Made by a program: the position numbers and the translations under genes | Virus record (IMG/VR): IMGVR_UViG_3300030107_006644 | Location: 62,001-126,000 of that record | Length of the DNA stretch: 64,000 nucleotides | Reading direction: 5' to 3' (one strand) | The notes under the pieces: model-generated | The model's input: only the letters and a program-made list of their open reading frames with translations | Databases searched by the model: none | What the model was told of the DNA's origin: nothing | Shown: positions 10,541 to 62,653 of the stretch, in pieces | Layout: each line of letters opens with the position of its first letter | How positions within the stretch are numbered: position 1 is the first letter of the stretch

Positions 10541-10598
10541 CATTTGGACATCGAAGTGGATGCTGCAGCCTGTTAGACATTGCTGCAAAGGCTCTTAG
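10530..10598 (+). CDS. putative 22-aa peptide MSTNIWTSKWMLQPVRHCCKGS
   Basis: AGGAG RBS upstream of the ATG; fills the gap before the protease; below the ORF-track cutoff. Confidence 0.4.
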   Translation: MSTNIWTSKWMLQPVRHCCKGS

Positions 10599-10633
10599 AT
10601 CACGCGGGTAGCGCCCGCACTTATGGAGTTATT

Positions 10634-11254
10634 ATGAGTAAGAAACTATTAAGAGAATATTATGAGTTGTGCGATGGAGGATCCTGCCCAGACTTGCTTA
10701 CAGAGTCTGAAAAGGAGTTTGTTGCTAAAGGTGGCATAATTTTGTCTGGAAAGCTTCAAGAGGCAGAGGCCAGAAATGGCAATGGGCGAGTTTATCCCAA
10801 GAAAATCTTAGAAAGAGAGATGAAGAATTATCAAAAGCTTGTGAAAGAGCGACGAGCTTTGGGAGAATTAGATCATCCTGATGAATCGGTGATCAATTTG
10901 CGCAACTGTTCTCATGTGGTTACAGAAGTCTGGTGGGATAGCGATAATCCAAACGCAGTAATGGGAAAAATAGAATGTCTCAACACACCATCAGGCAAAA
11001 TACTGCAAGAGCTAGCCAGAGCGGGAGTTAAATTGGGAATCTCCTCTAGAGGTCTGGGATCTGTCAAAGAGGACAAAGGAGACACCATAGTGGAAGACGA
11101 CTTTCAACTAATTTGCTTCGACATGGTATCAGAGCCGTCTACCAATGACGCCTTTATGATGACCGAGGCCAAAGATTACAAAAAGTCTAACATTTTTACC
11201 AAGGCTGATCGAATTAATCGAGCCTTAAACAACGTATTGAGAGATGAGGAATGA
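10634..11254 (+). CDS. gp21: prohead core protease (T4 gp21-like)
   Basis: NGNGRVYP, ALGELDHP, SH, TPSGKIL, GISSRGLGS, FDMVSEPS. Confidence 0.96.
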   Translation: MSKKLLREYYELCDGGSCPDLLTESEKEFVAKGGIILSGKLQEAEARNGNGRVYPKKILEREMKNYQKLVKERRALGELDHPDESVINLRNCSHVVTEVWWDSDNPNAVMGKIECLNTPSGKILQELARAGVKLGISSRGLGSVKEDKGDTIVEDDFQLICFDMVSEPSTNDAFMMTEAKDYKKSNIFTKADRINRALNNVLRDEE

Positions 11255-25605: not shown

Positions 25606-27516
25606 ATGTCTGTATTACAAAAACTAACCGAGGGGATTGTTGACAGAGATCTTGGAAAGGAAGGCGCCGCCCTGCTTAGTAAGTGGGAACGTACCGGTCT
25701 TTTAGAGGGTCTTAACAATGATCATACTCGTTCTAGCATGGCTAGACTGCTTGAAAATCAAGCAAAGGAGCTTCTCCGAGAGGCTTCTACTATGGCCGGC
25801 GGTGACGTTGAAGGCTTCGCATCTGTTGCGTTCCCGATTGTCCGTCGTGTCTTTGGAGGCCTTATCGCCAACGATCTGGTTTCCGTGCAGCCTATGAGCT
25901 TGCCTTCTGGTCTGATCTTCTTCTTAGACTTTCAGGTCACACCCGGTACCGCTCCTAGACTTGGCGCCAGCGATGACGATTCGTTATTCGGCGGTGGCCG
26001 CGTCGGTTCTGCAATCACTGGCGGTGTCAGTCTCGTCGACAATGACATTGAGAAGGGTTTCTACAACCTTAATCAAGGTTATTCGTCTCCGACTGGATCG
26101 CTTCAGCTTACGCTGGTTCCGATTGCTTCCGGTACTGTTGGTAGTGGTATCCTTGATGATGCCGTAGGGGCAGTGTCCCACTCTAGCTGGAAGAACAGCA
26201 AGGCAACCTCGCTTAGCGAGCTTTGCCAGTACGATCCCGATCTTTCTGGATCTTGCGTTGTTGTTGCAACCGCTGCGGGTAATGCCCTTCTGGGCGCAGC
26301 CGGCACTGGTAGTTTGAATCGTGATAACTTAGTTGCGATGATGATTTCATACAATGCATCGGATACCGCCTCCGCAGATGGTCTCTATACGGGTGTCGGA
26401 GGTGCTGCTCGCATGCATCGTCGTCTTACTCGCTTAGTCGGCAGATCTGCAACCACTGCTGAGTACAGCAACCAAGCTTTGGATCCGGGTGATAGCACCA
26501 ACACATCTCTTTTGTTCGTGTTTGAGTCTACGGGTTCGGCAGCCGGCGCAGGAGCTACTGCGGTCAGTCATGAGACAGGCCTCAAGAACCTCTTGACTCG
26601 GGTTGGTTCTGGTGCAAGTGCTACGGTTAGAGCCAAGGCTTTCGACTATCCAATTAGAGATAATCTCAACAATGTTGGAGAAAGAGCACTTGGATCGCTC
26701 GTCGGTGCTGACCAGTGGGGACTGGAAGCCAATGAGGAAATCCCTGAGATCGACATCAAGGTCGATTCCGTGGCGATTACCGCTGTAACCAAGAAGCTCA
26801 AGGCCAAGTGGACGCCTGAGTTGGGACAGGATCTTAATGCCTATCACAACTTGGACGCCGAGGTTGAGTTAACCGGTATTCTTTCCGAGCAGATTGCGCT
26901 GGAGATTGATCGCGAAATCGTGAACGATCTTGTTGTCAACGCATCGGCTGGAACGTACTACTGGTCTCGTTCGCCCGGTATGTTCCTTCGCAGGGACACT
27001 GGTGCTGAGATTGGAGCTAGCTCTGCTGCTCCGGACTTCACCGGTACCGTTAGCGAGTGGTATGAGACTCTTGTCGAAACCATCAACGATGTGTCTGCAC
27101 AGATTCACCGTAAAACTCTCCGTGGTGGAGCAAACTTTATCGTCTGCGGACCTGAAGTTGCTAACATCCTTGAGTTCACCAGTGGATTCCGTGCCAACAT
27201 CACTCATGATGATGACAAGGGAACTGTCGGCGCTGTGAACGCTGGCTCTATCTCGAAGAAGTGGGATGTCTGGGTTGACCCATACTTCCCCCGCAACGTG
27301 ATCCTTGTGGGTCGCCGTGGTAACAGCTTCCTTGAGAGCGGCTATGTTTACGCTCCGTATGTACCACTGCAGACTACCCCCACAATCTTCGGAACGGAAG
27401 ACTTCGTGCCACGTAAGGGTGTTATGACCCGCTACGGCAAGAAGATGGTCCGTCCTGATATGTATGGGCTAGTTATTGTTCGCGGTCTACTTGGTGAGGC
27501 TGGCGCTACAAGCTAA
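25606..27516 (+). CDS. gp23: major capsid protein (T4 gp23-like)
   Basis: LVSVQPMSLPSGLIFFLDF, KLKAKWTPELGQDLNAYHNLDAEVELT, YAPYVPL, GVMTRYG. Confidence 0.98.
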   Translation: MSVLQKLTEGIVDRDLGKEGAALLSKWERTGLLEGLNNDHTRSSMARLLENQAKELLREASTMAGGDVEGFASVAFPIVRRVFGGLIANDLVSVQPMSLPSGLIFFLDFQVTPGTAPRLGASDDDSLFGGGRVGSAITGGVSLVDNDIEKGFYNLNQGYSSPTGSLQLTLVPIASGTVGSGILDDAVGAVSHSSWKNSKATSLSELCQYDPDLSGSCVVVATAAGNALLGAAGTGSLNRDNLVAMMISYNASDTASADGLYTGVGGAARMHRRLTRLVGRSATTAEYSNQALDPGDSTNTSLLFVFESTGSAAGAGATAVSHETGLKNLLTRVGSGASATVRAKAFDYPIRDNLNNVGERALGSLVGADQWGLEANEEIPEIDIKVDSVAITAVTKKLKAKWTPELGQDLNAYHNLDAEVELTGILSEQIALEIDREIVNDLVVNASAGTYYWSRSPGMFLRRDTGAEIGASSAAPDFTGTVSEWYETLVETINDVSAQIHRKTLRGGANFIVCGPEVANILEFTSGFRANITHDDDKGTVGAVNAGSISKKWDVWVDPYFPRNVILVGRRGNSFLESGYVYAPYVPLQTTPTIFGTEDFVPRKGVMTRYGKKMVRPDMYGLVIVRGLLGEAGATS

Positions 27517-52006: not shown

Positions 52007-52028
52007 ATAGTGTGTGGAGGTTTTTATT

Positions 52029-52988
52029 ATGAAAAGAGTACTGATTATCGATGCCCTTAATATGTATTTTAGGGCTTACATTGTAGATCCAAGTTTGTCG
52101 ACTAACGGACAGCCGATTGGCGGCGTCAAGGGTTTTCTCAAGATACTGCAGAAGCAGATTAGAGAAAGCAAGCCCGATGAGGTTGTCATCTGCTGGGATG
52201 GCGAAGGTGGAAGCCAACGTCGGAAGAGTCAAGACAAGGGTTACAAGCAGGGTCGCAAACCAATTCGTCTCAACCGGGACATACGCAACTTGTCCGAGGT
52301 TGAAGAAATGGAAAACAAGGTTTGGCAGCAAACACAATTGTTTGAATACTTAAACCAACTACCAGTGATCCAAACAATGCTTCCAGCGGTTGAGGCCGAC
52401 GATGTTATCTCGTTTGTGACCCAATACCACAAGTATGATGACTGGCAAAAGGTTATTGTCTCCTCAGATAAGGATTTCTTTCAGCTTTGCGATGAGCACA
52501 CCGTATTATATCGGCCCATCCAGAAGCAGGTGCTAAATTCGAAGAGGATTACGGAGGATTTTGGCATCCATCCAGTTAATTTTGCTTTGGCTAGAGCTAT
52601 TGTGGGTGATCGTAGCGACAACCTTCCCGGCATTGCAGGTATTGGCTTGTCTACCGTTTCTAAACGCTTGCCGTTTTTAATTGAGGGCAAGTCCTACACT
52701 ATTGATGAGGTTATAGAGTACTGCGAGAACACTGATGCTAAAATTAAAGCTTATGGGACAATTGTAGAGCAACGAGAAGTGATCGAACACAACTATAAGA
52801 TGATGCAACTGTATGCTCCGTCGATTAGCGTGCAAGGCAAGCAAAAAGTGCGCCACGCTCTCGATAACTTTGTTCCAGAACTTAACCAGACTGAGTTCAA
52901 GAAGATGATGGTTAACGATGGCTTCGGAGTGGTCGACTTCTCAGATTTATTTGCATCCATGAAAAGAATTGTGGCCAACAACGCTTAG
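52029..52988 (+). CDS. 5'-3' exonuclease/flap endonuclease (T4 RNase H-like)
   Basis: LIIDALN, WDG, YKQGR, EADDVI, SSDKDFFQL, GDRSDNLPGIAGIG. Confidence 0.94.
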   Translation: MKRVLIIDALNMYFRAYIVDPSLSTNGQPIGGVKGFLKILQKQIRESKPDEVVICWDGEGGSQRRKSQDKGYKQGRKPIRLNRDIRNLSEVEEMENKVWQQTQLFEYLNQLPVIQTMLPAVEADDVISFVTQYHKYDDWQKVIVSSDKDFFQLCDEHTVLYRPIQKQVLNSKRITEDFGIHPVNFALARAIVGDRSDNLPGIAGIGLSTVSKRLPFLIEGKSYTIDEVIEYCENTDAKIKAYGTIVEQREVIEHNYKMMQLYAPSISVQGKQKVRHALDNFVPELNQTEFKKMMVNDGFGVVDFSDLFASMKRIVANNA

Positions 52989-53008: not shown

Positions 53009-55645
53009 ATGCCGATTTATCATGATAAGTGGCGCCAATTTCTGAAAGAAGAGGAAGAGTTTCAGAAGAACGTAGTGCGCCCCCGACTTAAACGAAACCG
53101 CTCTGCCCTCATAGACTCTGGACCCCATAATCACAATGGAGGTGGCGAATCCGGCGCCAAACCTAAGCCTCGCGGAGACTTGCCGCACGATGCTGGTCCA
53201 CTAAAAGAAGGGTTACAGCCTCAGCCTCGTTTGTTGCGCGAGATATCCGAAGACGAGGTGGAGCATATCCGCACAGCCATTGATGAAATGGGTCCAGAAG
53301 AACTCGCCTTCAATGATGCATTCGAAGGTAAGACGCGCAAGGTTATTGATTTTGCAGCCATTGACGTGGACTCTGAGCTTGGAAAGTTCATGGAGTTCTT
53401 TAGAAAGCAGGAGTACGAAGTAGATTGGAAGCGCGGGCTCGTCACAGCACTGCGAGATGTAACAACTTCGGAAGACTTAATAGATCAGCTTTTCGGACCC
53501 GGCCAGCCACCCAAAAAGAAGTACAAGAAAATTCAGATGAAGATCGGCAAGCTGTTTCCGAAGATAGCAGAAGTAGGAAAGAATCAGGCCGTACTCTTTA
53601 AGAAGGTCGTGGAACATGCCAAAATCCATCACGCGAATCGCATACCAAACCATCCGGGTAATGTCAGCGACCACCAATTGAAACAAGCACTGCCAGACGA
53701 AGAAGAATACAAGAGATACCAACAATTGTATCAACAAATGAGATTGTATGTGCCGAACTCCGGCTATTTTCAGCCGTCATGGTGGGAGGTTCCAGATTGG
53801 GCAACTAAGATGTCTAAGTATTGGCAAGAGAATGCAGCATACATTAAAGATGAGATCGATGAACTAAAAGGAGACCAGTACTCCATTATCCTCACGCGAG
53901 ATCCGATTGACATCCTTCGCATGAGCGATTTTAATAACATCACCTCCTGCCACACTCCGCCATCCAGAGGCGGGGGCGACACCTACTATAAGTGCGCAGT
54001 TGCTGAAGCTCACGGCCACGGAGCTATTGCATATGTTGTTGAAACACAAGAGCTATTAGAGGCTACTGAGACCGACACAATTGAGGCTGCTGAAGCTGTC
54101 ATCGAGCAGCTTGGAGGAGAGATCTTTCCAGACGATGTTAGGGGAAGCCATGTCGGACTCAGCACGGAGTTGAATCCAGTCTCTAGGCTACGTCTCAGAA
54201 AGTTTGTGTATGACACTCCAGATCCAGAGGGTGGTTACGATATCGGCACACAGCTAGCGGTACCGGAGAAGCGTGTGTACGGAAAGAAGATTCCCGGCTT
54301 CGTTGAGCGTGTAGTTCAGTGGGCGAGAGATAATCAGGAAGAGGCTCTTCAGAACATGCCAGTGGATGCATACGGTGATGGCATCGATTTAGGCAAGTTT
54401 AATATTGTGGGTGCTTCCTATGAAGATACTCAAGGCTATTCCGGCCGCCGGGCTCTTATGGTGCAACTAACTGGCCGGCCAAACGAAGACTTTGATGGCC
54501 AGATCGAGCAAGATGCAAGCGCGGAACATGACTTAGACACCTCTATGTTTACCGCTGGCCAAATTGAAGATGCCCAACTCCGCGCCGATGAGATAGCTGA
54601 AGACTGGAACCGTCGCTACCAAGCTGCGGAAATTCAGGCAACTGCTGAAGACGACGATGGCCAAGTCATCATCATGCTCAGAGCATATATGAAGGTTGAC
54701 TGGGGCGAAGAAGAGTGGAACAAGCTTCCGCTTCCAAGCACTGCGCGCTGGGCAGTCTCGGAGCTTAACGACTTGGGTTGGTCTTGGGCCGATGAAGGCA
54801 CGGCTTGGCTTAGGCGGGACACGCACAGACAAACAATATCTTTGGGCTTCCGTATCAACCCCGAGCATATACCAGAGTGGACCGGCATGCCGTTCACTGC
54901 AGACCCAGAAGAGATCGAAGACTTTGGCGTAGCCGTCAACGCTATTGATGACATGTACGACGGAATTAAACATTACCTCACCAGACACTACAAACTCCAA
55001 GGCATTATGGCCGGCGGTGCATTTTTAAACATGGCCATGGAGATCTCAAACAATGATATTGATCCATATGAGTGGACGCTTGAACTTGATGACCGGTGGG
55101 ATCCGGAGGAAGCTAACATTGCAATAGGTCAAGTAGAGTTCTTCTTTGATGCCGAGGAGCTTCAGTGGAACCCACAAGTTCTACAGCAGGTGCTAGACTC
55201 CCACGATTTTAGAACTGCGATTCGGAACAAAATGTTGGCAGATGCCAAAGAAGAGGTCGGAACACAGTACAACGTAGACATTTGGACGCAGGGGACGGGG
55301 GCTTTGATAGTTGATAATGGCGTAAACTACGAATTTGCACTTGTTGTTAGCAATGAGGATCCGGATGAAGTGATCGAATTGTTTCAGACAGCAGTCTGGC
55401 AACCCGGTACTGTCGATGACGAAGATAAGCTTCGCGAAATCTTTTTGGGAACACTGGAAACGATGCAGAGAGCGCGGATGCCATCTGGTATGAGAGATCC
55501 AGAGCCTATCGAACAATCTGGTCCCGACCAGCCAGATCCGCCGCCGGCCCAAAATTCTGAAGATGAGAATCTACCAAGCAGTAGATTAGATGAGAGTAGA
55601 AATATGCATAGGATGTACAAGAAATGGAGAAGCTTTATAAAATGA
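53009..55645 (+). CDS. large acidic hypothetical protein with leader-like motifs at both ends
   Basis: Late motif at 52994; N-terminal DKWRQFLKE, C-terminal KKWRSFIK; central DILRMSDF..ITSCH. Confidence 0.75.
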   Translation: MPIYHDKWRQFLKEEEEFQKNVVRPRLKRNRSALIDSGPHNHNGGGESGAKPKPRGDLPHDAGPLKEGLQPQPRLLREISEDEVEHIRTAIDEMGPEELAFNDAFEGKTRKVIDFAAIDVDSELGKFMEFFRKQEYEVDWKRGLVTALRDVTTSEDLIDQLFGPGQPPKKKYKKIQMKIGKLFPKIAEVGKNQAVLFKKVVEHAKIHHANRIPNHPGNVSDHQLKQALPDEEEYKRYQQLYQQMRLYVPNSGYFQPSWWEVPDWATKMSKYWQENAAYIKDEIDELKGDQYSIILTRDPIDILRMSDFNNITSCHTPPSRGGGDTYYKCAVAEAHGHGAIAYVVETQELLEATETDTIEAAEAVIEQLGGEIFPDDVRGSHVGLSTELNPVSRLRLRKFVYDTPDPEGGYDIGTQLAVPEKRVYGKKIPGFVERVVQWARDNQEEALQNMPVDAYGDGIDLGKFNIVGASYEDTQGYSGRRALMVQLTGRPNEDFDGQIEQDASAEHDLDTSMFTAGQIEDAQLRADEIAEDWNRRYQAAEIQATAEDDDGQVIIMLRAYMKVDWGEEEWNKLPLPSTARWAVSELNDLGWSWADEGTAWLRRDTHRQTISLGFRINPEHIPEWTGMPFTADPEEIEDFGVAVNAIDDMYDGIKHYLTRHYKLQGIMAGGAFLNMAMEISNNDIDPYEWTLELDDRWDPEEANIAIGQVEFFFDAEELQWNPQVLQQVLDSHDFRTAIRNKMLADAKEEVGTQYNVDIWTQGTGALIVDNGVNYEFALVVSNEDPDEVIELFQTAVWQPGTVDDEDKLREIFLGTLETMQRARMPSGMRDPEPIEQSGPDQPDPPPAQNSEDENLPSSRLDESRNMHRMYKKWRSFIK

Positions 55646-55824
55646 ACTATAAGTTGTGGCTAATTGTTTTGCTTTTGCTATTGGCGTGCGCACCAAAGAA
55701 AGAGGTGCGCGTACCTGAGCAGACACCGGTTGAGTTTATTCGATACGAAGAGATAGACTTTCCGGACGACGAAGAGTTGGAAGACTTGCCTGAAGCCGGC
55801 GAGGAAACAGAGGACGAAGAATAA
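55642..55824 (+). CDS. small lipoprotein with acidic tail
   Basis: ATGA overlap; lipobox LLAC after a hydrophobic stretch. Confidence 0.65.
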   Translation: MNYKLWLIVLLLLLACAPKKEVRVPEQTPVEFIRYEEIDFPDDEELEDLPEAGEETEDEE

Positions 55825-55825
55825 G

Positions 55826-56266
55826 ATGGAACTTATATCGACACACATATGCAAAGGCCAGAACATTGGCGTGCATGGAAATCTTTTTGGAGGCGTTATG
55901 CTATCGTGGCTGGATGAGGCCGGCGCAGCATACGCATGTCAGGTTTGCGATACCCCGCGAATGGTGACTGTGAAGATGGCAGAGACTGTATTTAATAGAC
56001 CAGTGCGGCCGGGACAATTAATCAAAGTGTATGGCGAGGTGTTGGAGATAGGCAACTCCTCATGCAAAGTTAAACTTCAGGCTAGAAGACACAGCGTGTA
56101 CAACGGCACGCAGAAGCCGGTATGCCAGACTGAATTAACTTACGTCAGAATCGATGGCGATGGTGAGGCGATACCGATCAGCAAAAAGGTTAAAGACGCT
56201 TATCGCCGAAAACTTGAGGAAGAGGAAGACGATTCAGAACTGTATGAGATTCACGGAGGAGATTAG
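55826..56266 (+). CDS. hotdog-fold acyl-CoA thioesterase (YciA-like)
   Basis: HGNLFGGVMLSWLDEAG, MVTV, F.RPV..G, GNSS, YVRID. Confidence 0.9.
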   Translation: MELISTHICKGQNIGVHGNLFGGVMLSWLDEAGAAYACQVCDTPRMVTVKMAETVFNRPVRPGQLIKVYGEVLEIGNSSCKVKLQARRHSVYNGTQKPVCQTELTYVRIDGDGEAIPISKKVKDAYRRKLEEEEDDSELYEIHGGD

Positions 56267-56353
56267 AAAATCTGAGATCCAAAACGGATCGAAAATGTCG
56301 AAATTCCAAAATTTCGTCGCAAGCAATTTTTCCAGATTTTCACTTTTAGTTAT

Positions 56354-56776
56354 ATGAAGCTTTTGTTAGAAAAATGGCGCAGATTCTTATTTGAAGAAAG
56401 AGAGGAAGATATGGACAGCAAGAAAATAGCGAAAATTGTCTTATATGACGGAAACAAGGTTCTATTATTAAGGAGATCGAGACATTTAAAGAAGTATCCC
56501 GGAGAATGGGATCTGCCCGGCGGCCACTTAATTGTTGGAGAAGAAGTTACAGACGGCCTCCAGAGAGAGGTTTGGGAAGAGACTGGCTTAACGATTAGAA
56601 GCCCAGAAAAGGTGTATTCCCAGAGTAGATACACCTATTTTAAGGCGCCTATGCCAACTGGTGGAATTAAACTTAGTCAGGAACACACCGAGCACGAAAT
56701 GGTAGATATGGCAAACTTGTCTAATTATGAACTACCGGAAAAATACCGAACTGCAGTGGAGAGGGCTATGAAGTGA
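56354..56776 (+). CDS. Nudix hydrolase with shared leader
   Basis: WDLPGGHLIVGEEVTDGLQREVWEETGL Nudix box; LSQEH. Confidence 0.93.
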   Translation: MKLLLEKWRRFLFEEREEDMDSKKIAKIVLYDGNKVLLLRRSRHLKKYPGEWDLPGGHLIVGEEVTDGLQREVWEETGLTIRSPEKVYSQSRYTYFKAPMPTGGIKLSQEHTEHEMVDMANLSNYELPEKYRTAVERAMK

Positions 56777-56991
56777 GAAATTTGATTAGAAAATCGCAAC
56801 AGCATATTGGCTCGCGAAATGAAACTTACTTTCAACATATGAAAGCGGCATGGAAGATTATTTACCTGCTAAAGACCCTAGAGCTAAAATGTTTCATACA
56901 TTCCTTTATTCCGGGACTATTTACAGATGCAGTATCTGAAAAGATTGAGTGTTTGCAAAAAATGGCAAGCAGAAACAAGGAGCAGCAATGA
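56773..56991 (+). CDS. DUF6356-like small protein
   Basis: ETYFQHM...IHSFIPGLF. Confidence 0.6.
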   Translation: MRNLIRKSQQHIGSRNETYFQHMKAAWKIIYLLKTLELKCFIHSFIPGLFTDAVSEKIECLQKMASRNKEQQ

Positions 56992-58346
56992 AATTAATAC
57001 TTGAAAAATGGCGAAAATACGAAGAAGAGCAGAGATTAGATGAGGTTGCCGAAATGGGCGATGAGTATGGTAGCCGATCAGATTCAGAACCCGGCCCTAG
57101 GGTCAGCGACGCCCTCCGCCGCTTCACGAGCCCGGAGTCAGCCGGAGGCCAACTCGGCAACATCGCCGGTGGCAAAGCGGCAAGCCGAAGTGTTCCGTCA
57201 CAGGTTGCAGGATTCGCCGGCGATATTCTCAATACCTATCAACAGTCTGGAGAGCACGACACTGCAGGCCACGATCCTGCCGGATCCGCCCGAACAGCCA
57301 TCGAATCTGGCGTGATCGAGCGAATTCCAAAACTTGGTCATGTCGGGTTAGCCACAGATATAGGGAATACCATACAACACCTGACTCAAGGCCGAGGAGC
57401 AGAAGCTGGCCGCACCGCCATGGCCGGCGCAGGTGATGCTCTCGGAGGTATTCTCGGCACAGCGCTCCTTGGCCCGGGCGTCGGCACTGCCATTGGAGCT
57501 ACAGCCGGCGACTGGGCTGGTCGGAGCTTAGGTCCGGGATCGGTGGCACACCGCAGATGGTCAGACCCGGGGCGTCTGATGAGTGATTTTGGCTACGAGG
57601 TCGGCGCTTTGGCCCCCGGAGGGGAAACGGCGATGCAACGATATGGCGACCGTGGCGTCGGCCAGACTTTGGATGATTTTGGCTACGAGGTCGGCGATGT
57701 TGTAGACCGCCGCGTTATCCAGCCGGCTGCTGAAGCAGCTGAATCGTTCCGGTCTGGAGAGATGTTCGGCCCACGAGGAACAGCAATTGCAAATTCGCCA
57801 TGGAACCCTCTTAGTCGAAATTTTGCTTTGTACGAGGGAGAAAGTATGGCAACACATCAAAAAACAGATCTACTAACAGAAGCGCAAGTTTTAAGAATGC
57901 GGCAATTATCGGGAATCAGTTCGAAAAGGAGGGTTGTTTTGAACGAAGAGGTAGCCACTGGCATGTGGGCCGTTGGTCTAATTGTTTATTTTCTCGTCCT
58001 CGGTGAAATGACTGACCGATGGCAAGTCGGAAAGCCGGAGGGGGGCCCACTTAGTGCTCTCGGTCGAGGCGTAAAGTCTGCATGGCAGAAGCTCAAGTCT
58101 TCCGCCGAATCCAAAGCTCAGCAAGGAGACGAAAGTCTTGAATCTGTTGTTGATGCTGTCGAATCTGAAGGAGCCCGCGCCGCTCAGTCCGCAAATTTGT
58201 CGGAAGAAGACATCGCCAGAATTCAATCAGAATTTGGAGATGACGAGCAGTTGGCAGCACTTCTCTCGCAACTTGAGGAAGCTCCACCAGAAGCATATGA
58301 GCAGGTTCTTATGCAAATTGAACAATACGTTAAATCAAAGCTATAG
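56988..58346 (+). CDS. leader-bearing hypothetical protein with glycine zipper and TM helix
   Basis: AAGGAG RBS; MKLILEKWRKY; GGILGTALLGPGVGTAIGATAG; MWAVGLIVYFLVLG. Confidence 0.75.
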   Translation: MKLILEKWRKYEEEQRLDEVAEMGDEYGSRSDSEPGPRVSDALRRFTSPESAGGQLGNIAGGKAASRSVPSQVAGFAGDILNTYQQSGEHDTAGHDPAGSARTAIESGVIERIPKLGHVGLATDIGNTIQHLTQGRGAEAGRTAMAGAGDALGGILGTALLGPGVGTAIGATAGDWAGRSLGPGSVAHRRWSDPGRLMSDFGYEVGALAPGGETAMQRYGDRGVGQTLDDFGYEVGDVVDRRVIQPAAEAAESFRSGEMFGPRGTAIANSPWNPLSRNFALYEGESMATHQKTDLLTEAQVLRMRQLSGISSKRRVVLNEEVATGMWAVGLIVYFLVLGEMTDRWQVGKPEGGPLSALGRGVKSAWQKLKSSAESKAQQGDESLESVVDAVESEGARAAQSANLSEEDIARIQSEFGDDEQLAALLSQLEEAPPEAYEQVLMQIEQYVKSKL

Positions 58347-58359
58347 TGGTAGGTAGGCA

Positions 58360-58998
58360 ATGAAACTCTTAATGGAAAATTGGCGAAGGTTTATAAACGA
58401 GGGCGCGGATCCGGAAGTCGTCCGCGATGCGTTCGCAAACACGCCTCCCGACTATATGGAGGCGTCCGTAAAGCAGAGAAACCCGGGCCCCGGATCTGCA
58501 GGTAGTACATTTTCGTCGCCAACTTCGGTACAAGAACTGGTTTCTGCTAACTGGGTACCTTACAATCATCCAGATATACAGAGCCCGGCAGTTGGGTTTA
58601 AAGCGCCGATATCTGGTGAGTTAGGAATTGCAGAAATAAGCGGACTACCAGACGATCAGGTTGTCAGATTTCAGCCCGCACACGGAGGCAAGGTGACCGT
58701 TAAAGACGAGAGCAGTCCTAAATTTGGCCAACAATTGGCAGAAGTGGCCACGGACATACCTGCTGGCAATAGAAATGTCAGTCATACAACTCTTATTTTA
58801 GGCCCATCACAAGAAGACCCAAACAAATTAAGGGTTTGGACCTTTTTCCCGGGCGATCCCACTCCAAAATTTCCAGACATTACGATGGACGATGTTCGAC
58901 GCGCTCTTGGCTCAAAAGAAGAGGAGGTCGTCGCCACTGTTGCTGATGCTAAGCAAATGGGTTACACTTTTGTCAAGCATGCCGAGGGTATTGCGTGA
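58360..58998 (+). CDS. leader-bearing hypothetical protein
   Basis: MKLLMENWRRFINE; C-terminal LILGP...VWTFFPGDP. Confidence 0.75.
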   Translation: MKLLMENWRRFINEGADPEVVRDAFANTPPDYMEASVKQRNPGPGSAGSTFSSPTSVQELVSANWVPYNHPDIQSPAVGFKAPISGELGIAEISGLPDDQVVRFQPAHGGKVTVKDESSPKFGQQLAEVATDIPAGNRNVSHTTLILGPSQEDPNKLRVWTFFPGDPTPKFPDITMDDVRRALGSKEEEVVATVADAKQMGYTFVKHAEGIA

Positions 58999-59456
58999 AG
59001 CTCCTACTTGAAAATTGGCGGAAGTATTTGAAAGAGGTTTCTATGGGCCGCGATATGACAAGCTCTATAGAATACACAGCCTTAGTGCTCGACAACGATT
59101 CGCATGAGAGGCTAGCCGTATACGCTCCAGAAGGGTGGAAAGTTATTGCCCACCATATGACAATCATCAGGCCTCACGAAATGAAAAGTGGTCGGCTACC
59201 AAGCCAATGGCTGGACTTTGAGGGATGCTTTGAAGTAACGCATATCGCTCAAAATGAGCAAGTCATGACTGCTCTGGTTGATCTTGGAGATACACCAATA
59301 CCGATGAAAGGGCCAGTCATGCCGCATGTCACTATTGCCACCAACCCGGAAACAGGTGGGAAGGCGTACATGTCCAACGATATTCCAATTACAAGCTTTG
59401 AAGAATTGTCGGAACCAATCAGCATATGCGGCGCCGTCGAGGAGGTGTTTAGATGA
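58995..59456 (+). CDS. 2H phosphoesterase-family protein with shared leader
   Basis: Two HxT motifs, HHMTI and PHVTI. Confidence 0.75.
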   Translation: MKLLLENWRKYLKEVSMGRDMTSSIEYTALVLDNDSHERLAVYAPEGWKVIAHHMTIIRPHEMKSGRLPSQWLDFEGCFEVTHIAQNEQVMTALVDLGDTPIPMKGPVMPHVTIATNPETGGKAYMSNDIPITSFEELSEPISICGAVEEVFR

Positions 59457-60427
59457 AGCTCCTATTTGAAAATTGGCGAAGGTTTATAACTGAAGAAACA
59501 GATGCAACAGGCGCTATGCCTGCACATCTTGACACAAAGAAGATCGAGGCTGCGAACCAAGAGCTTTTAGGCCAACAGGGTTATACTATCTTGCGTGAGC
59601 TTGGTAGAGGACACTACGGGGTTGTGTACGAGGTTCAGAATGAACAGAGCGGTGAGCGACTCGCAGCGAAAGTTGTCAGAAAGAGTGATAGAGAAACAGA
59701 GAATTACGAATTTGCGATGAAAAACAAGGGCTCAATGCCTCCTGAATATGCAAAATACTTGCCAGAGGTTAAAGAAATTATACCCGGAGCCTCAGACCGC
59801 AACATCATATTCATGGAGCTACTTAAACCTTTGCCAGACAGAGTGGCGCAGGAACTGTTTGCAATGGAAGATAAACCCGATGCATCGCAAAAAACAGAAA
59901 AGATCTTAAAAAGCCCCGAAGCGGTGGCTGAGTTAGTTCAAAGAATTGTCAACAATAATAGAATTTTAAACCAAATGCGCGACTTCTTAGTTAATCGGAA
60001 AGAGGTTACAAAAGCTGCCGTTAACGCAGCGACTAAATCTTCGCACTCGGATCCTGAAGGCCTCCTGAAGGCTGTGTATGGTGCCGTAGTCCGAGAACTT
60101 GAATTTCAAAGTGTTGGAGTTTACAAGTCTTTCGAGTCTGCTTTGAAGAATGATCTGCTGTTTTACTTAGATAAACAGGTTGTACCTGTTCACCAGCCAG
60201 AGCCAGACGATCCAGATGCGGATGATTTGTGGACAGGCCCGGCCATGGCAAAGACACAAGAGTTGTTCCCCGAGGCCGAGAACCTAATTAATGCTATGAG
60301 GTATTTTATGCAAGACCAGCAGTGGCGGCCTAAAGATGTGCACATAAAGAACGTTATGATGAGGCCATCGACTAATGATTTTGTAATTGTAGATCTGGGC
60401 TTGTTCCAGAGAGGGATATTTGAATGA
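59453..60427 (+). CDS. Ser/Thr protein kinase-like protein with shared leader
   Basis: LGRGHYGVVY, AAK, IFMELL, DVHIKNVM, IVDLG. Confidence 0.85.
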   Translation: MKLLFENWRRFITEETDATGAMPAHLDTKKIEAANQELLGQQGYTILRELGRGHYGVVYEVQNEQSGERLAAKVVRKSDRETENYEFAMKNKGSMPPEYAKYLPEVKEIIPGASDRNIIFMELLKPLPDRVAQELFAMEDKPDASQKTEKILKSPEAVAELVQRIVNNNRILNQMRDFLVNRKEVTKAAVNAATKSSHSDPEGLLKAVYGAVVRELEFQSVGVYKSFESALKNDLLFYLDKQVVPVHQPEPDDPDADDLWTGPAMAKTQELFPEAENLINAMRYFMQDQQWRPKDVHIKNVMMRPSTNDFVIVDLGLFQRGIFE

Positions 60428-61203
60428 AAGATTTATTAGATGCTTGGTCGAAATACGCCGATAGGCCCATGTTTGAAGAGATTATGCCTTCCGACGTCGA
60501 CACCGCCAGTTTTAGAATAAACGATGAACTTGAACACAGGGTATGGGATAAGGACGATAAATTGAAGCCAGAAATCCGCCAACGTCTTTTGGAAATAGCC
60601 TCGGAAGCTTGGGCCATTATGGGTCTTCCTACCGTAGCTGTTGACGACATAACTTTTACGGGCTCCTTGGCCAACTATAATTGGTCGTCATATTCTGATG
60701 TTGACTTGCATATACTGGTTGATTTTGGAAGCTTGCCGGGCCCCGAAGATTTGGCAGAAGTAATGATGAACGCAAAACGCGCCGCATGGAACAACAAGCA
60801 CGATATCACAATACACGGCTACGAGGTAGAGATATACATTCAGGATTCCAACGAAGTGCACCATTCTACCGGCGTATATTCGGTGCTGCATGATAGCTGG
60901 CTTGTCAAGCCCGAGAAAAAAAGGTTTACGATTGACTACGACAATGTTAAGCTTAAGGCTGCTCACATAATGAATCAAATTGATAAGATTGAAAATGTAT
61001 ATGAGCGCGGCGGCTATGAAGAGGCGATGCAAGATGTTGACAGGCTGAAAGAAAAGATCAGAAAGTTTAGAAAGTGTGGACTTGAACAAGGTGGCGAATA
61101 CTCATCGGAAAATATCGCATTTAAAGCACTTAGGAGAAATGGCTATCTGAAAAAGCTTTCGGATTTAAAGACAACCTCCTATGACAACTTAAGATCTATT
61201 TAG
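60424..61203 (+). CDS. Pol beta-superfamily nucleotidyltransferase
   Basis: TGSLANYNWSSYSDVDLH (GS..DxD), EVEIY, GEYSSENIAFKALRRNG. Confidence 0.85.
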   Translation: MKDLLDAWSKYADRPMFEEIMPSDVDTASFRINDELEHRVWDKDDKLKPEIRQRLLEIASEAWAIMGLPTVAVDDITFTGSLANYNWSSYSDVDLHILVDFGSLPGPEDLAEVMMNAKRAAWNNKHDITIHGYEVEIYIQDSNEVHHSTGVYSVLHDSWLVKPEKKRFTIDYDNVKLKAAHIMNQIDKIENVYERGGYEEAMQDVDRLKEKIRKFRKCGLEQGGEYSSENIAFKALRRNGYLKKLSDLKTTSYDNLRSI

Positions 61204-61212
61204 AAAATTCGC

Positions 61213-61241
61213 TTGACATTCTGGCCCGAATTGGCTATATT
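61213..61241 (+). promoter_or_regulatory. sigma70-like promoter for helicase
   Basis: TTGACA-17-TATATT. Confidence 0.75.
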
Positions 61242-61270: not shown

Positions 61271-62653
61271 GTGCCCGTGTCTGAGACCCGTAGTGCAGAC
61301 TTTTCTAGATTTGGCAAATCCTTCCAAGAAGGCTTGTGTCAACTGATCATGCAAGATCGCCCGTTTGCTGATCAGATAGGCGAAGTATTAGATATAGGGT
61401 ATTTTGAACTCAAATATTTGCAAGTCTTTGTGCAGTGTGTGTTGTCGTATAAAGAGAAGTACAACGTACATCCCACGTCGAAGATTATGACAACCCTGCT
61501 TCGTACCGAAATAGATGATCAAAACGAGGCAACAAAAAAGCAGGTCCGAGACTTCTTTGCCCGGATTTACGAAACGGAGGTTGACGGCAACCAGTATATT
61601 AAAGAGACGGCGCTTGATTTTTGCAGGAAGCAGAACCTCAAGAACGCCATGATTAAATGTGTGCCGCTGCTGGAAGAGTCGTCTTTTGACGAAATCAGTT
61701 CGATTCTCAACTCATCACTAAAGCTTGGCCTGTGTAACGACTATGGATACGATTACCTAAAAGATTTCGAAGAGAGGTTCAAGTTTAAGCCAAGAAATCA
61801 AGTAAATACAGGATTTGAAGAGATTGATACGATTTCTAAGGGTGGCCTAGGGCAGGGCGAGTTGGGCGTAATCATTGCTCCCACTGGGGCTGGAAAATCT
61901 ATGGTGCTGGTGCACTTGGGCACTGAAGCGTTAAAAGCAGGTAAGACTGTCGTACATTATACGCTTGAGCTACAGGATGTTTCTATTGCCTCTAGGTACG
62001 ACAGTTGCCTTTCGGGGGTTCCGCTATCGGATCTGAATTCCTTTAAAGAAATGATATATGAAAAGGTGCAAGACACTCCGGGCCGACTAATTATTAAAGA
62101 GTATCCAACAAAGTCTGCGTCAGCTAAGACGTTAGGGGCTCATTTAGAGAAGCTAAAACAGCGCGGCGTAGAGGTGGATATGATAATTGTTGACTACGGG
62201 GACTTGCTGAGACCCAGTACCGCACATAGAGAAAGGAGGCATGACTTGCAGTCAATTTATGAAGAGTTAAGAGCTATTGCACAAGAGGTTCGCGCTCCGG
62301 TCTGGACCGCTTCACAAACCAATCGCTCTGGACTTAACGCAGAAGTTATCACGATGGAATCGATTAGCGAAGCTTTCAGCAAGTGTTTTGTTGCTGATTT
62401 TATCTTTTCGCTATCCAGAACAATCGAGGATAGAAACAGCAATGTAGGCAGAGTGTTCGTTGCAAAGAATAGATTTGGACCAGATGGGATAATCTATCCA
62501 ATTTATATGGATACTTCGCGCGTAAAGATAAAGGTGTATCCGAGCAACGGAGATACGCCCGGGGATGTGATGGCGAAGAGCGCGAAAGAACAGTCAGAAC
62601 TTCTCAAAGAGAAGTACAAAAAATTTAGAAAGGAAGAAAACGGGAGCAAATGA
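61271..62653 (+). CDS. replicative DnaB-like helicase (T4 gp41-like)
   Basis: APTGAGKS, YTLE, IIKEYPT, IVDYGDL, WTASQTNR, KNRFG. Confidence 0.95.
   Translation: MPVSETRSADFSRFGKSFQEGLCQLIMQDRPFADQIGEVLDIGYFELKYLQVFVQCVLSYKEKYNVHPTSKIMTTLLRTEIDDQNEATKKQVRDFFARIYETEVDGNQYIKETALDFCRKQNLKNAMIKCVPLLEESSFDEISSILNSSLKLGLCNDYGYDYLKDFEERFKFKPRNQVNTGFEEIDTISKGGLGQGELGVIIAPTGAGKSMVLVHLGTEALKAGKTVVHYTLELQDVSIASRYDSCLSGVPLSDLNSFKEMIYEKVQDTPGRLIIKEYPTKSASAKTLGAHLEKLKQRGVEVDMIIVDYGDLLRPSTAHRERRHDLQSIYEELRAIAQEVRAPVWTASQTNRSGLNAEVITMESISEAFSKCFVADFIFSLSRTIEDRNSNVGRVFVAKNRFGPDGIIYPIYMDTSRVKIKVYPSNGDTPGDVMAKSAKEQSELLKEKYKKFRKEENGSK

What the first reader, a model, noticed from the sequence alone, without database searches (positions are those of the whole stretch)
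58360..59500. Leader appears to spread as a DNA cassette
The leaders are similar at nucleotide level as well as protein level. GAAAATTGGCGAAGGTTTATAA (22 nt) is identical in the starts of 58360 and 59453. The starts of 58995 and 59453 share TGAAGCTCCTA.TTGAAAATTGGCG. Several leader genes are coupled by 4-nt stop/start overlaps. This suggests new cargo genes are captured or swapped by recombination at the leader, forming an expandable array.
Basis: partly seen in the sequence, partly recalled or inferred. Interest (0 to 1): 0.6.

Follow-up and report, generated by a model that had tools for sequence, protein, structure and literature searches.

The report
Capsid-targeting leader on swappable phage genes
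A 14-residue N-terminal leader shared by many unrelated genes of this uncultured marine T4-like phage most likely sends those proteins into the capsid, as the T4 internal-protein leader does, and related phages exchange single genes with breakpoints exactly at this leader.

Summary
Three adjacent genes (58360, 58995, 59453) start with M-K-L-L-x-E-N-W-R-x-[FY]-[LI]-x-E, share up to 22 identical bases, and are joined by 4-nt stop/start overlaps.

The window lies in a complete 205.5-kb T4-like phage genome. Thirteen of its genes carry this leader. In related marine virus contigs it heads 163 distinct proteins in about 90 unrelated cargo families, including NUDIX, kinase-like, nucleotidyltransferase-like, 2H phosphoesterase, SAM lyase and M23 peptidase.

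Conservation stops at [LIV]-x-E (residues 12-14), the cleavage motif of T4 prohead protease gp21. The genome encodes a gp21 homologue. A 10-residue variant of the leader lines up residue for residue with the T4 capsid targeting sequence. My best reading is a capsid-targeting propeptide on ejected effector proteins. This is inferred from sequence and has not been shown.

The DNA-cassette idea is partly supported. Codon choice in the leader is far more uniform than amino-acid constraint and codon bias predict, and conservation is bounded exactly by the ATG and codon 14. The island is absent from 55 of 76 relatives and differs in content in the rest. Single-gene cassettes are shared between phages with homology starting at one leader and ending in the next. 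However, the 22-nt match in this window is mostly explained by a clade-wide leader consensus.

The parts
53009..55645 (+). 878-aa protein of unknown function. It anchors the array in relatives. It has a leader variant at the N-terminus (MPIYHDKWRQFLKE, 53009-53050) and a second motif copy at the C-terminus (MYKKWRSFIK, 55604-55642) preceded by L-D-E.
   Evidence: Every homologue that has a complete C-terminus carries the C-terminal motif, and full-length ones also carry an N-terminal copy. No Pfam or PHROG match. A 1742-aa protein elsewhere in the genome, which has an M23 peptidase domain, clusters in the same family.
55624..55824 (+). 66-aa ORF with a lipoprotein-like signal (LLLLACAP). No leader. 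Conserved next to the 878-aa gene in L004 and L123.
55826..56266 (+). 146-aa thioesterase (4HBT). No leader.
   Evidence: Pfam PF03061, E 5.6e-15.
56354..56776 (+). 140-aa NUDIX hydrolase with a leader (MKLLLEKWRRFLFE).
   Evidence: Pfam PF00293, E 3e-15. Homologues in other contigs carry the long leader, a 10-residue leader (MTKWNKFLTE) or none.
56773..56991 (+). 72-aa ORF without a leader. It overlaps both neighbours by 4 nt. Similar ORFs occur in several relatives.
56988..58346 (+). 452-aa glycine-rich protein with a leader (MKLILEKWRKYEEE). The leader's position 12 is E, not L/I. Possibly a membrane-active ejection protein.
   Evidence: Weak PHROG match to tape-measure proteins, E 4e-6.
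58360..58998 (+). 212-aa cargo of unknown fold with a leader (MKLLMENWRRFINE).
   Evidence: In the AF2 model (mean pLDDT 69.5) the leader is helix 2-14. Foldseek found no PDB match. Its leader shares 47 identical bases with a leader on a different cargo in L088.
58995..59456 (+). 153-aa 2H phosphoesterase (CNPase/LigT-like) with a leader (GTG start, KLLLENWRKYLKE).
   Evidence: Two invariant H-x-T motifs. In the AF2 model (pLDDT 84.8) the leader is a detached low-confidence helix 2-16, followed by a disordered linker and a confident domain. Foldseek hits are to CNPase and 2'-5' RNA ligase-like structures, E down to 4e-4, TM about 0.6.
59453..60427 (+). 324-aa protein kinase-like cargo with a leader (MKLLFENWRRFITE).
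   Evidence: Pfam Pkinase, E 1.8e-6, which is below the gathering cut-off. PHROG kinase. The L123 orthologue (62% identical) has a different leader.
60424..61203 (+). 259-aa nucleotidyltransferase-like cargo with a degenerate leader (MKDLLDAWSKYADR).
   Evidence: phrog_36119, E 2e-50, and weak NTP_transf_2. Homologues in Lak and other phages align only from residue 16-29 onwards, after the leader.
10580..11254 (+). Prohead protease of the T4 gp21 family. It is the proposed processing enzyme for the leader.
   Evidence: Pfam Peptidase_S77, E 2.9e-31, above the cut-off. 32% identical to T4 gp21, E 5e-28, with the GELxHP and SSRGLGS blocks conserved.
25606..27516 (+). T4 gp23-type major capsid protein. 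Its N-terminal propeptide holds conserved L-x-E sites (LTE9, LLE34, LLE50, LRE59).
   Evidence: phrog_138, E 3.5e-70. Alignment with T4 gp23. The sites are conserved in 58 unique relatives.
52014..52988 (+). 5'-3' exonuclease (FEN/RNase H-like). Conserved left flank of the island.
   Evidence: Pfam PF02739, E 1e-29. It abuts the DnaB-like helicase gene directly in 55 of 76 relatives.
61271..62653 (+). DnaB-like helicase. Conserved right flank of the island.
   Evidence: Pfam DnaB_C, E 1.3e-20.

Best explanation
The leader is a capsid-targeting propeptide of the T4 kind. The proposed mechanism has four steps.

1. During head assembly, the N-terminal amphipathic helix (core W-[RK]-x-[FY]-[LI]-x-E) binds the scaffolding core of the prohead.
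2. This takes the attached protein inside the capsid.
3. The gp21-type prohead protease then cuts after the conserved Glu at position 14.
4. The mature enzymes are ejected into the host with the DNA, where they act before any phage gene is expressed.

The island at 53009-61203 is an array of such ejected-protein genes, translationally coupled through ATGA overlaps.

Because the same 42-nt coding leader heads every cassette, it also acts as a patch of homology. Crossovers between leaders, within one genome or between co-infecting relatives, would add, delete or swap whole in-frame cargo genes. This would explain why the array differs between relatives.

Shown here: the anatomy, the conservation pattern, the presence of the protease, the variable arrays, and the leader-bounded homology blocks.

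Inferred: packaging, cleavage, ejection, and the crossover itself.
For: Position of the motif:
- The leader sits exactly at the start codon. W is residue 8 in 12 of the 13 genes and residue 9 in one.
- 13 of the 25 occurrences of W-[RKS]-x-[FY] in the whole proteome are N-terminal leaders, and one more is the C-terminal copy on the 878-aa protein.

Conservation across 195 leader instances:
- Position 12 is L/I/V/M in 92% and position 14 is E in 85%. Conservation ends there.
- That pattern is the gp21 cleavage motif L/I-x-E (PMC9026906).

T4-type head machinery:
- A gp21-family protease is present.
- The gp23-type capsid protein has conserved L-x-E sites in its propeptide.

Likeness to the T4 capsid targeting sequence:
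- The 10-residue variant MTKWNKFLTE matches T4 MKTYQEFIAE at aromatic-4, F7, L/I8 and E10.
- These are the positions reported to matter for targeting (4, 7) and for processing (8, 10).

Modularity:
- About 90 unrelated cargo families carry the leader.
- Homologous NUDIX proteins occur with and without it.
- The AF2 model shows a detached helix ahead of a folded domain.

Cargo fits virion or ejected proteins and early-acting enzymes: M23 peptidase, DUF2272, NUDIX, kinase-like, nucleotidyltransferase-like, 2H phosphoesterase, SAM lyase, exonucleases.

Shuffling:
- The island is absent or different in relatives.
- In the L090/L094 and L110/L111 pairs, identity jumps from about 25% to 83-100% at the leader ATG and falls back inside the next leader.
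- Homology that arrives from the upstream gene ends 25-49 nt into the next leader in 22 of the 32 right-hand endpoints counted around leader starts.
- 57 leader pairs on unrelated cargo share 31 or more identical bases.
- In three of the four marine metagenome runs laid (X3-X5), contig depth rises 10- to 40-fold exactly at the leaders. The extra contigs diverge from the window on both sides of the leader.
Against: - There is no proteomic or experimental evidence. The phage is uncultured.
- The leader profile does not detect the T4 sequence or any leader in the nearest cultured relatives (immuto, Mel-JY01, RM378). Homology with the T4 sequence is therefore a pattern match, not a statistical one.
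- Some leaders lack the site: 56988 has E at position 12, and 60424 is degenerate.
- The complex prediction of protease with leader gave no verdict.

For the recombination part:
- The codon-level consensus could reflect selection on the mRNA 5' end.
- Adjacent leaders are not more alike than other leaders of the same locus.
- Strains at 97-98% identity show no rearrangement.
- Breakpoints at gene boundaries would survive selection whatever mechanism made them.
Confidence: 0.6

Rival explanations
1. The leader is mainly an mRNA or translation element. On this view the first ten codons are conserved because they set translation initiation or coupling, and the peptide has no targeting role.
For: - Codon choice is strongly position-specific and unlike both gene bodies and the 5' ends of other genes: CTC at Leu3 52% against 8-11%, CTT at Leu5 88% against 21-29%, GAA at Glu6 97% against 59-68%, CGA at Arg9 49% against 14-15%.
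- The bias is strongest in codons 2-10.
- 46% of leader genes overlap the upstream gene by 4 nt, against 12% of other genes.
Against: - Substitutions are conservative at the protein level: F/Y at 11, L/I/V at 12, K/R at 10.
- The motif also occurs at the C-terminus of the 878-aa family and inside the L123 polyprotein, far from any start codon.
- There is no excess RNA structure: mean MFE -9.2 against -9.4 for shuffles, and the highest mean pair probability is 0.13.
- No RegA-type translational repressor is encoded.
- Shine-Dalgarno-like motifs are only slightly more frequent than upstream of other genes, 64% against 53%.
Confidence: 0.12
2. The leader is a docking helix for a target other than the capsid. 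The target could be a phage replication or assembly factory, a chaperone, or a host hub protein. On this view the terminal Glu is not a cleavage site.
For: - The leader is predicted to be a short detached amphipathic helix.
- Many cargo are nucleotide- or RNA-acting enzymes that could work in the infected cell without being packaged.
- The island lies in the replication module, between the exonuclease and helicase genes.
Against: - The end of conservation coincides with the gp21 motif.
- The key positions match the T4 capsid targeting sequence.
- Very large cargo with cell-wall hydrolase domains (1742 aa with M23; 680 aa with DUF2272) are typical virion or ejection proteins.
- T4 internal-protein genes also lie outside the head gene cluster.
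Confidence: 0.15
3. Leader similarity reflects only common descent plus purifying selection on the peptide, and the arrays vary through ordinary illegitimate recombination. On this view the leader has no role as a recombination substrate.
For: - Breakpoints at gene boundaries are also common for genes without a leader.
- Enrichment of homology endpoints at leader starts is modest: 24.8% against 16.8%, P 0.035.
- There is no adjacency effect.
- The window's own 22-nt match is close to what the family consensus predicts.
Against: - Synonymous identity between leaders on unrelated cargo in different contigs is 0.54, against 0.39-0.42 expected.
- 57 such pairs share 31 or more identical bases, and one pair shares 47.
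- Cassette homology starts within 3 nt of the ATG and ends inside the next leader.
- T4-type recombination is reported to need less than 50 bp of homology (PMC2839356).
Confidence: 0.3
4. The leader is a secretion or membrane-targeting signal (Sec, Tat or lipoprotein).
For: It is N-terminal, and it is shared by unrelated proteins.
Against: - The sequence is charged and has no hydrophobic core, no twin-arginine context and no lipobox (direct reading).
- The one lipoprotein-like ORF in the island (55624-55824) lacks the leader.
- The cargo are cytoplasmic-type nucleotide enzymes.
Confidence: 0.02

Closest known systems
Capsid targeting sequence (CTS) of phage T4 internal proteins IPI, IPII, IPIII and Alt
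   Same: - A short N-terminal propeptide shared by otherwise unrelated proteins.
- It ends in L/I-x-E, which prohead protease gp21 cuts.
- The genes lie in small, highly variable loci outside the head gene cluster.
- The proteins are thought to be injected counter-defence or takeover factors (PMC3012670, PMC9026906).
- T4 MKTYQEFIAE and the short variant MTKWNKFLTE share aromatic-4, F7, L/I8 and E10.
   Different: - The usual form here is 14 residues with an extra MKLLxEN segment, and Trp replaces Tyr.
- The leader profile does not detect T4.
- The repertoire is much larger: 13 genes in this genome and about 90 cargo families in the clade.
- Many cargo are recognisable enzymes, where the T4 internal proteins are small and basic.
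- One family carries the motif at both termini.
- Nothing has been shown experimentally.
Propeptides of ejection and inner-body proteins in giant phages (phiKZ, 201phi2-1, SPN3US)
   Same: - Many head-internal proteins are processed by a gp21-related protease after Glu at a short motif.
- Paralogues share identical N-termini.
- The propeptides are thought to act as targeting sequences (PMC5694885).
   Different: - Those propeptides are mostly longer than 100 residues and the motif is S/A-x-E.
- They are not one portable leader on dozens of unrelated cargo.
- This phage has a gp23-type T4-like head.
PeSL cassettes and the repeated elements at T-even internal-protein loci (Arbiol et al. 2010; Repoila et al. 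1994, as cited there)
   Same: A short repeated sequence flanking non-essential genes in hyperplastic regions is proposed to be the site of homologous exchange that inserts, deletes or swaps whole genes (PMC2839356).
   Different: - PeSLs are intergenic promoter plus stem-loop units.
- Here the repeat is coding, bounded exactly by the ATG and codon 14, with no conserved flank, no stem-loop and no promoter signal above chance.
- Genes overlap by 4 nt.
Integron gene-cassette arrays
   Same: A one-directional array of unrelated cassettes that varies between relatives, each cassette carrying a short common element.
   Different: - No integrase or attC-like element was seen among the island genes.
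- The common element is translated.
- Exchange would rely on general homologous recombination.

Membership tests
T4-type capsid targeting sequence (CTS) propeptides | A short N-terminal peptide shared by otherwise unrelated proteins of one phage | tested here: met
   13 genes in the 205.5-kb genome. 163 proteins in about 90 cargo families in relatives.
T4-type capsid targeting sequence (CTS) propeptides | The peptide ends in the prohead-protease site L/I-x-E | tested here: met
   At sequence level only. Position 12 is L/I/V/M in 92% and position 14 is E in 85% of 195 leader instances, and conservation ends there.
T4-type capsid targeting sequence (CTS) propeptides | The phage encodes a gp21-family prohead protease and a T4-type head | tested here: met
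   Peptidase_S77, E 2.9e-31. 32% identical to T4 gp21. gp23-type capsid protein, portal and terminase.
T4-type capsid targeting sequence (CTS) propeptides | Detectable sequence relationship to the T4 CTS itself | tested here: inconclusive
   The key positions match in the 10-residue variant. The 16-position leader profile finds nothing in T4, although it finds 10 sites in the window's own genome.
T4-type capsid targeting sequence (CTS) propeptides | The proteins are present inside the capsid with the leader removed | not testable with these tools
   The phage is uncultured and no proteome is available.
T4-type capsid targeting sequence (CTS) propeptides | The leader alone is enough to package a foreign protein | not testable with these tools
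   This needs an experiment.
T4-type capsid targeting sequence (CTS) propeptides | The genes lie in hyperplastic loci whose content varies between relatives | tested here: met
   The island is absent in 55 of 76 relatives and has different content and order in the others.
PeSL-type mobile regulatory cassettes | An intergenic promoter plus stem-loop repeat flanking the cassettes | tested here: not met
   No conserved sequence lies outside ATG to codon 14. There is no excess RNA structure. Promoter and terminator scans are at shuffle level. Genes overlap by 4 nt.
Integron cassette array | An integrase and attC recombination sites | tested here: not met
   No integrase or recombinase domain in the island proteins. 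attC-like inverted repeats were not searched for specifically.
Sec/Tat/lipoprotein signal peptides | A hydrophobic core after a basic N-region, or a lipobox or twin-arginine motif | tested here: not met
   The leader composition is charged and polar.
2H phosphoesterase superfamily (cargo at 58995-59456) | Two H-x-T/S motifs on the 2H fold | tested here: met
   HHMT and PH[IV]T are invariant in 8 homologues. Foldseek hits are to CNPase and LigT-like structures. Pfam tRNA_lig_CPD matches two of the 87 representative leader-bearing proteins from relatives.

The most novel reading that the evidence does not exclude
A clade of uncultured marine T4-like phages of about 200 kb runs a gene-capture system without a dedicated recombinase. 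One 42-nt coding leader would serve two roles. It would be the address label that loads proteins into the capsid for injection, and it would be the portable homology patch through which whole in-frame effector genes are gained, lost and traded between phages. The result would be the largest known repertoire of capsid-delivered enzymes, about 90 families. Some members, such as SAM lyase, 2H phosphoesterase, NUDIX and kinase, look like pre-emptive counter-defence.
Probability: 0.35. Interest if true: 0.78.

Novelty: new variant of a known kind. Interest (0 to 1): 0.62.

Why it matters
If the leader is a capsid address label, it gives a sequence-only way to list the proteins that a large group of abundant, uncultured ocean phages inject with their DNA. 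These proteins act before any phage gene is transcribed. They are therefore prime candidates for counter-defence and host takeover.

It would extend the T4 internal-protein paradigm from a few small proteins in coliphages to dozens of enzyme families. It would also offer a natural example of one short coding element serving both protein sorting and genome plasticity.

In practice, such a leader could be tested as a tag for loading foreign proteins into non-coliphage capsids.

Tried and rejected
- Complex prediction of the prohead protease with the first 40 residues of the kinase-like cargo gave no verdict (score 0.00). It counts neither for nor against binding.
- RNA structure around the start: no excess stability and no consistent pairing.
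- RegA-type translational repressor (PF01818): absent.
- T4 late-promoter motif TATAAATA: 5 matches against 2.0 expected, none in the island. Sigma-70 and terminator scans were at shuffle level.
- Cultured phages:
  - No DNA match to the island.
  - No tblastn match for the 878-aa protein.
  - No match for a 20-residue leader query, which is too short to be informative.
  - The leader profile is absent from immuto, Mel-JY01 and RM378. In LR756508 it gave only one weak partial match (E 0.06, 8 of 16 positions).
- Sequence search of the PDB for the 153-aa and 212-aa cargo: nothing significant.
- 212-aa cargo: a moderate AF2 model with no Foldseek match.
- ESM Atlas search for the 878-aa protein: only unnamed viral clusters, at chance-level scores.
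- Test for extra similarity between adjacent leaders: not significant when positions are permuted within loci (P 0.32).
- The leader-to-leader 'joints' in metagenome contigs have sides under 35 nt. I read them as repeats that fit two places, not as deletions.
- Literature search for the motif strings: no relevant paper.
- I considered that the leader mimics the LLxKW...LLEG motif of the capsid-protein propeptide, which T4 gp23 shares. The spacing of the key residues differs, so I left it as a note.
Full report
**Where the window lies.** The window is bases 62001-126000 of a single 205,517-bp virus record that CheckV rates as complete.
- It is a T4-like myovirus. It has a large terminase (5176-6762), a portal (6769-8817), a gp23-type major capsid protein (25606-27516) and a gp21-family prohead protease (10580-11254).
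- The capsid protein's nearest cultured relatives are Flavobacterium phage immuto, Microcystis phage Mel-JY01 and Rhodothermus phage RM378, at 40-46% identity.
- Near-identical DNA occurs in marine metagenomes from several studies.

**The observation.**
- The starts of 58360 and 59453 share 22 identical bases.
- The starts of 58995 and 59453 share the quoted string.
- NTGA overlaps join 56773, 56988, 58995, 59453 and 60424 to the gene before each.
- With genome-wide codon usage as the null, a 22-nt run appears in 0.4% of simulations. The three adjacent leaders share 98 identical bases against 84.7 +/- 3.5 expected.

**Extent of the feature.**
- A six-frame scan finds the motif at thirteen gene starts in the genome. 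Trp is exactly residue 8 from the start codon in twelve of them and residue 9 in the other.
- 13 of the 25 occurrences of W-[RKS]-x-[FY] in the proteome are N-terminal leaders, and one more is a C-terminal copy.
- A profile built from 20 leaders recovers ten of the sites, with E from 6e-10 to 3.5e-4.
- In the window the leader genes start at 53009, 56354, 56988, 58360, 58995, 59453 and 60424.
- Outside the window the leader heads a 1742-aa protein with an M23 peptidase domain, a 680-aa protein with DUF2272, a 245-aa protein and two proteins of about 210 aa.

**The leader in relatives.** I fetched loci from IMG/VR through the helicase and three cargo proteins.
- The leader heads 163 distinct proteins, which fall into about 90 families with no detectable similarity after the leader.
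- The consensus is M-K-L-L-[FLM]-E-N-W-R-[KR]-[FY]-[LIV]-[NKT]-E.
- Position 12 is aliphatic in 92% and position 14 is Glu in 85%. From position 15 on there is no conservation.
- Variants exist. One is a 10-residue form, MTKWNKFLTE, on NUDIX proteins.
- Internal copies occur in a 1053-aa kinase/nucleotidyltransferase polyprotein in L123.
- A C-terminal copy, preceded by x-E, is present in every homologue of the 878-aa family that has a complete C-terminus.
- NUDIX homologues occur with the long leader, the short leader or none.

**What the leader most likely is.** T4 internal proteins carry a 10-residue capsid targeting sequence.
- That sequence binds the scaffolding core and is removed by gp21, which cuts after Glu in L/I-x-E.
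- Residues 4 and 7 matter for targeting, and residues 8 and 10 for processing (PMC9026906, PMC3012670).
- The T4 ipII and ipIII genes read MKTYQEFIAE.
- The short variant here has W4, F7, L8 and E10. The long form has the same core after four extra residues.
- The protease is 32% identical to T4 gp21, and the sequence blocks GELxHP and SSRGLGS are conserved.
- The capsid-protein propeptide keeps four L-x-E sites in 58 relatives, the last one (LRE59) just before the conserved mature core.
- In the AF2 model of the 153-aa cargo, the leader is a detached low-confidence helix, followed by a disordered linker and a confident domain.

I therefore read the leader as a T4-type capsid-targeting propeptide. 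This rests on sequence logic only.

**The cargo.**
- In the island: NUDIX, a kinase-like protein, a nucleotidyltransferase-like protein, a 2H phosphoesterase (two H-x-T motifs and a CNPase/LigT-like fold), a glycine-rich 452-aa protein and two proteins of unknown function.
- In one Pfam pass over 87 representative cargo from relatives: Pkinase, tRNA_lig_CPD, PolyA_pol, NUDIX, SAM lyase, RNase_T, DnaJ and DUF192. About 75 have no family.
- Cell-wall hydrolase domains and early-acting nucleotide enzymes both fit ejected proteins.

**Is the leader conserved as DNA?** Yes, and across the whole clade.
- Given the amino acid, codon choice is position-specific. It differs from gene bodies and also from codons 2-14 of genes without a leader:

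| Position | Codon | In leaders | Background |
|---|---|---|---|
| Leu3 | CTC | 52% | 8-11% |
| Leu4 | CTA | 47% | 13-16% |
| Leu5 | CTT | 88% | 21-29% |
| Glu6 | GAA | 97% | 59-68% |
| Arg9 | CGA | 49% | 14-15% |

- The bias holds when one leader is sampled per cargo family.
- Synonymous identity between leaders on unrelated cargo in different contigs is 0.54, against 0.39-0.42 expected. Within a contig it is 0.60.
- Mean identity is 27% up to the ATG, high through codon 14, and 27-34% after it.
- 57 pairs on unrelated cargo share 31 or more identical bases. The leader at 58360 shares 47 with a leader in L088.
- When metagenome contigs are laid on the island, depth rises 10- to 40-fold exactly at the three leaders in three of the four runs (X3-X5). 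The extra contigs diverge on both sides of the leader.
- Against this family-specific null, the window's own three leaders are only marginally more alike than expected (P 0.058).
- Neighbouring leaders are not more alike than other leaders of the same locus.
- RNA structure, a RegA-type repressor and promoter motifs do not explain the codon pattern.

**Is the array plastic, and do breakpoints fall at leaders?**
- In 55 of 76 relatives the exonuclease gene abuts the helicase gene. About twenty have islands of 0.9-5.5 kb with other content. The window's island is 8.3 kb.
- L004 shares four families with the window, but the nucleotidyltransferase gene sits at the opposite end of its island.
- Other relatives hold arrays of five to nine leader genes, in different combinations, between the same flanking genes.
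- The 2H cassette has six different upstream neighbours.
- Against the closest relative, L123 (68-74% nucleotide identity), the window has an extra block at 56777-59452. The block ends at the kinase leader. The L123 orthologue (62% identical) starts with a different, longer leader.
- In all-against-all blastn, 22 of the 32 right-hand homology endpoints counted around leader starts (-150 to +200) lie 25-49 nt into the leader. For other genes they cluster at the gene boundary.
- Two clean cases:
  - L090 and L094 share only the 2H cassette. Identity is 13-40% upstream and 83-93% from the ATG through the gene and the first 30 nt of the next leader. It then returns to background.
  - L110 and L111 share one cassette in the same way. 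L111 also has an extra leader-bounded pair of genes, including a second copy of that cassette.
- Enrichment of endpoints at leader starts over other gene starts is modest: 24.8% against 16.8%, P 0.035.
- Strains 97-98% identical to the window keep its gene order.

**Comparison with what is known.**
- The closest known system is the T4 CTS with its variable internal-protein loci. More than 30 internal-protein variants and repeated flanking elements have been described for the T-even phages (PMC2839356).
- This case differs in several ways: the leader sequence, its absence from the nearest cultured relatives, the number and enzymatic nature of the cargo, copies at both protein termini, and the fact that the repeated element is the coding leader itself, where PeSLs are intergenic.
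- A text search for the motif found no relevant paper.

**Verdict.** Cassettes bounded by leaders do move between phages, and the leader has a DNA consensus. A crossover in the leader has not been seen, and selection on codons is not excluded. The main new reading is functional: the leader is probably a capsid address label. I rate this a new variant of a known kind.

Noticed in passing
L131:3000-4081, L134:2312-3777 and 7206-7556, L007:14475-15112, L092:4637-5122, L107:8723-8941, L116:5616-5996: A second N-terminal leader class, MK[IL]TKxQLKQIIKEE, heads 12 genes in related contigs, often next to genes with the main leader. It also ends in I-x-E-E. It is not present in this genome.
   Followed up: partly
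window 55604-55642; C-termini of homologues in L004, L010, L019, L030: The 878-aa family carries the W-[RK]-x-F-[LI] motif at its C-terminus as well, preceded by L/T-x-E. This recalls T4 Alt, which is processed at both ends.
   Followed up: partly
L123:2328-5489: In the closest relative, the kinase-like and nucleotidyltransferase-like proteins are one 1053-aa reading frame. It has a low-complexity linker of about 470 residues and internal motif copies. In the window they are two genes joined by ATGA.
   Followed up: partly
window 25669-25710 (capsid protein residues 22-35); T4 gp23 in L137:4946-5400: The capsid-protein propeptide motif ALLSKWERTGLLEG is nearly invariant in 58 relatives and is shared with T4 gp23 (AELLNKWKPLLEGEG). 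It looks like the leader, but the key residues are spaced differently.
   Followed up: partly
L108:5458-6378 (a 362-kb contig): Here the 2H phosphoesterase domain is fused behind a P-loop kinase-like domain and has no leader. This arrangement resembles RNA-repair enzymes.
   Followed up: no
window 57100-57193: A strain about 97-98% identical to the window, in run X3, replaces 92 nt of the glycine-rich 452-aa gene with 11 other bases. The net loss of 81 nt keeps the frame.
   Followed up: no
window 61213-61241: The best sigma-70-like match in the region (TTGACA, 17 nt, TATATT; 11 of 12) lies just after the island and before the helicase gene. The scan as a whole is at shuffle level.
   Followed up: no
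window 55624-55824: A small ORF with a lipoprotein-type signal (LLLLACAP) overlaps the end of the 878-aa gene. It is conserved in L004 and L123.
   Followed up: no
alignment A7 (87 leader-bearing proteins from relatives): One leader-bearing cargo matches the S-adenosylmethionine lyase family (E 7e-11). Others match DnaJ, PolyA_pol and RNase_T. The tool did not report which loci they come from.
   Followed up: no
window 10634-10666: From its likely ATG, the prohead protease starts MSKKLLREYYE, with an L-R-E near the N-terminus. This is like the LIE-9 site noted near the N-terminus of T4 gp21.
   Followed up: no
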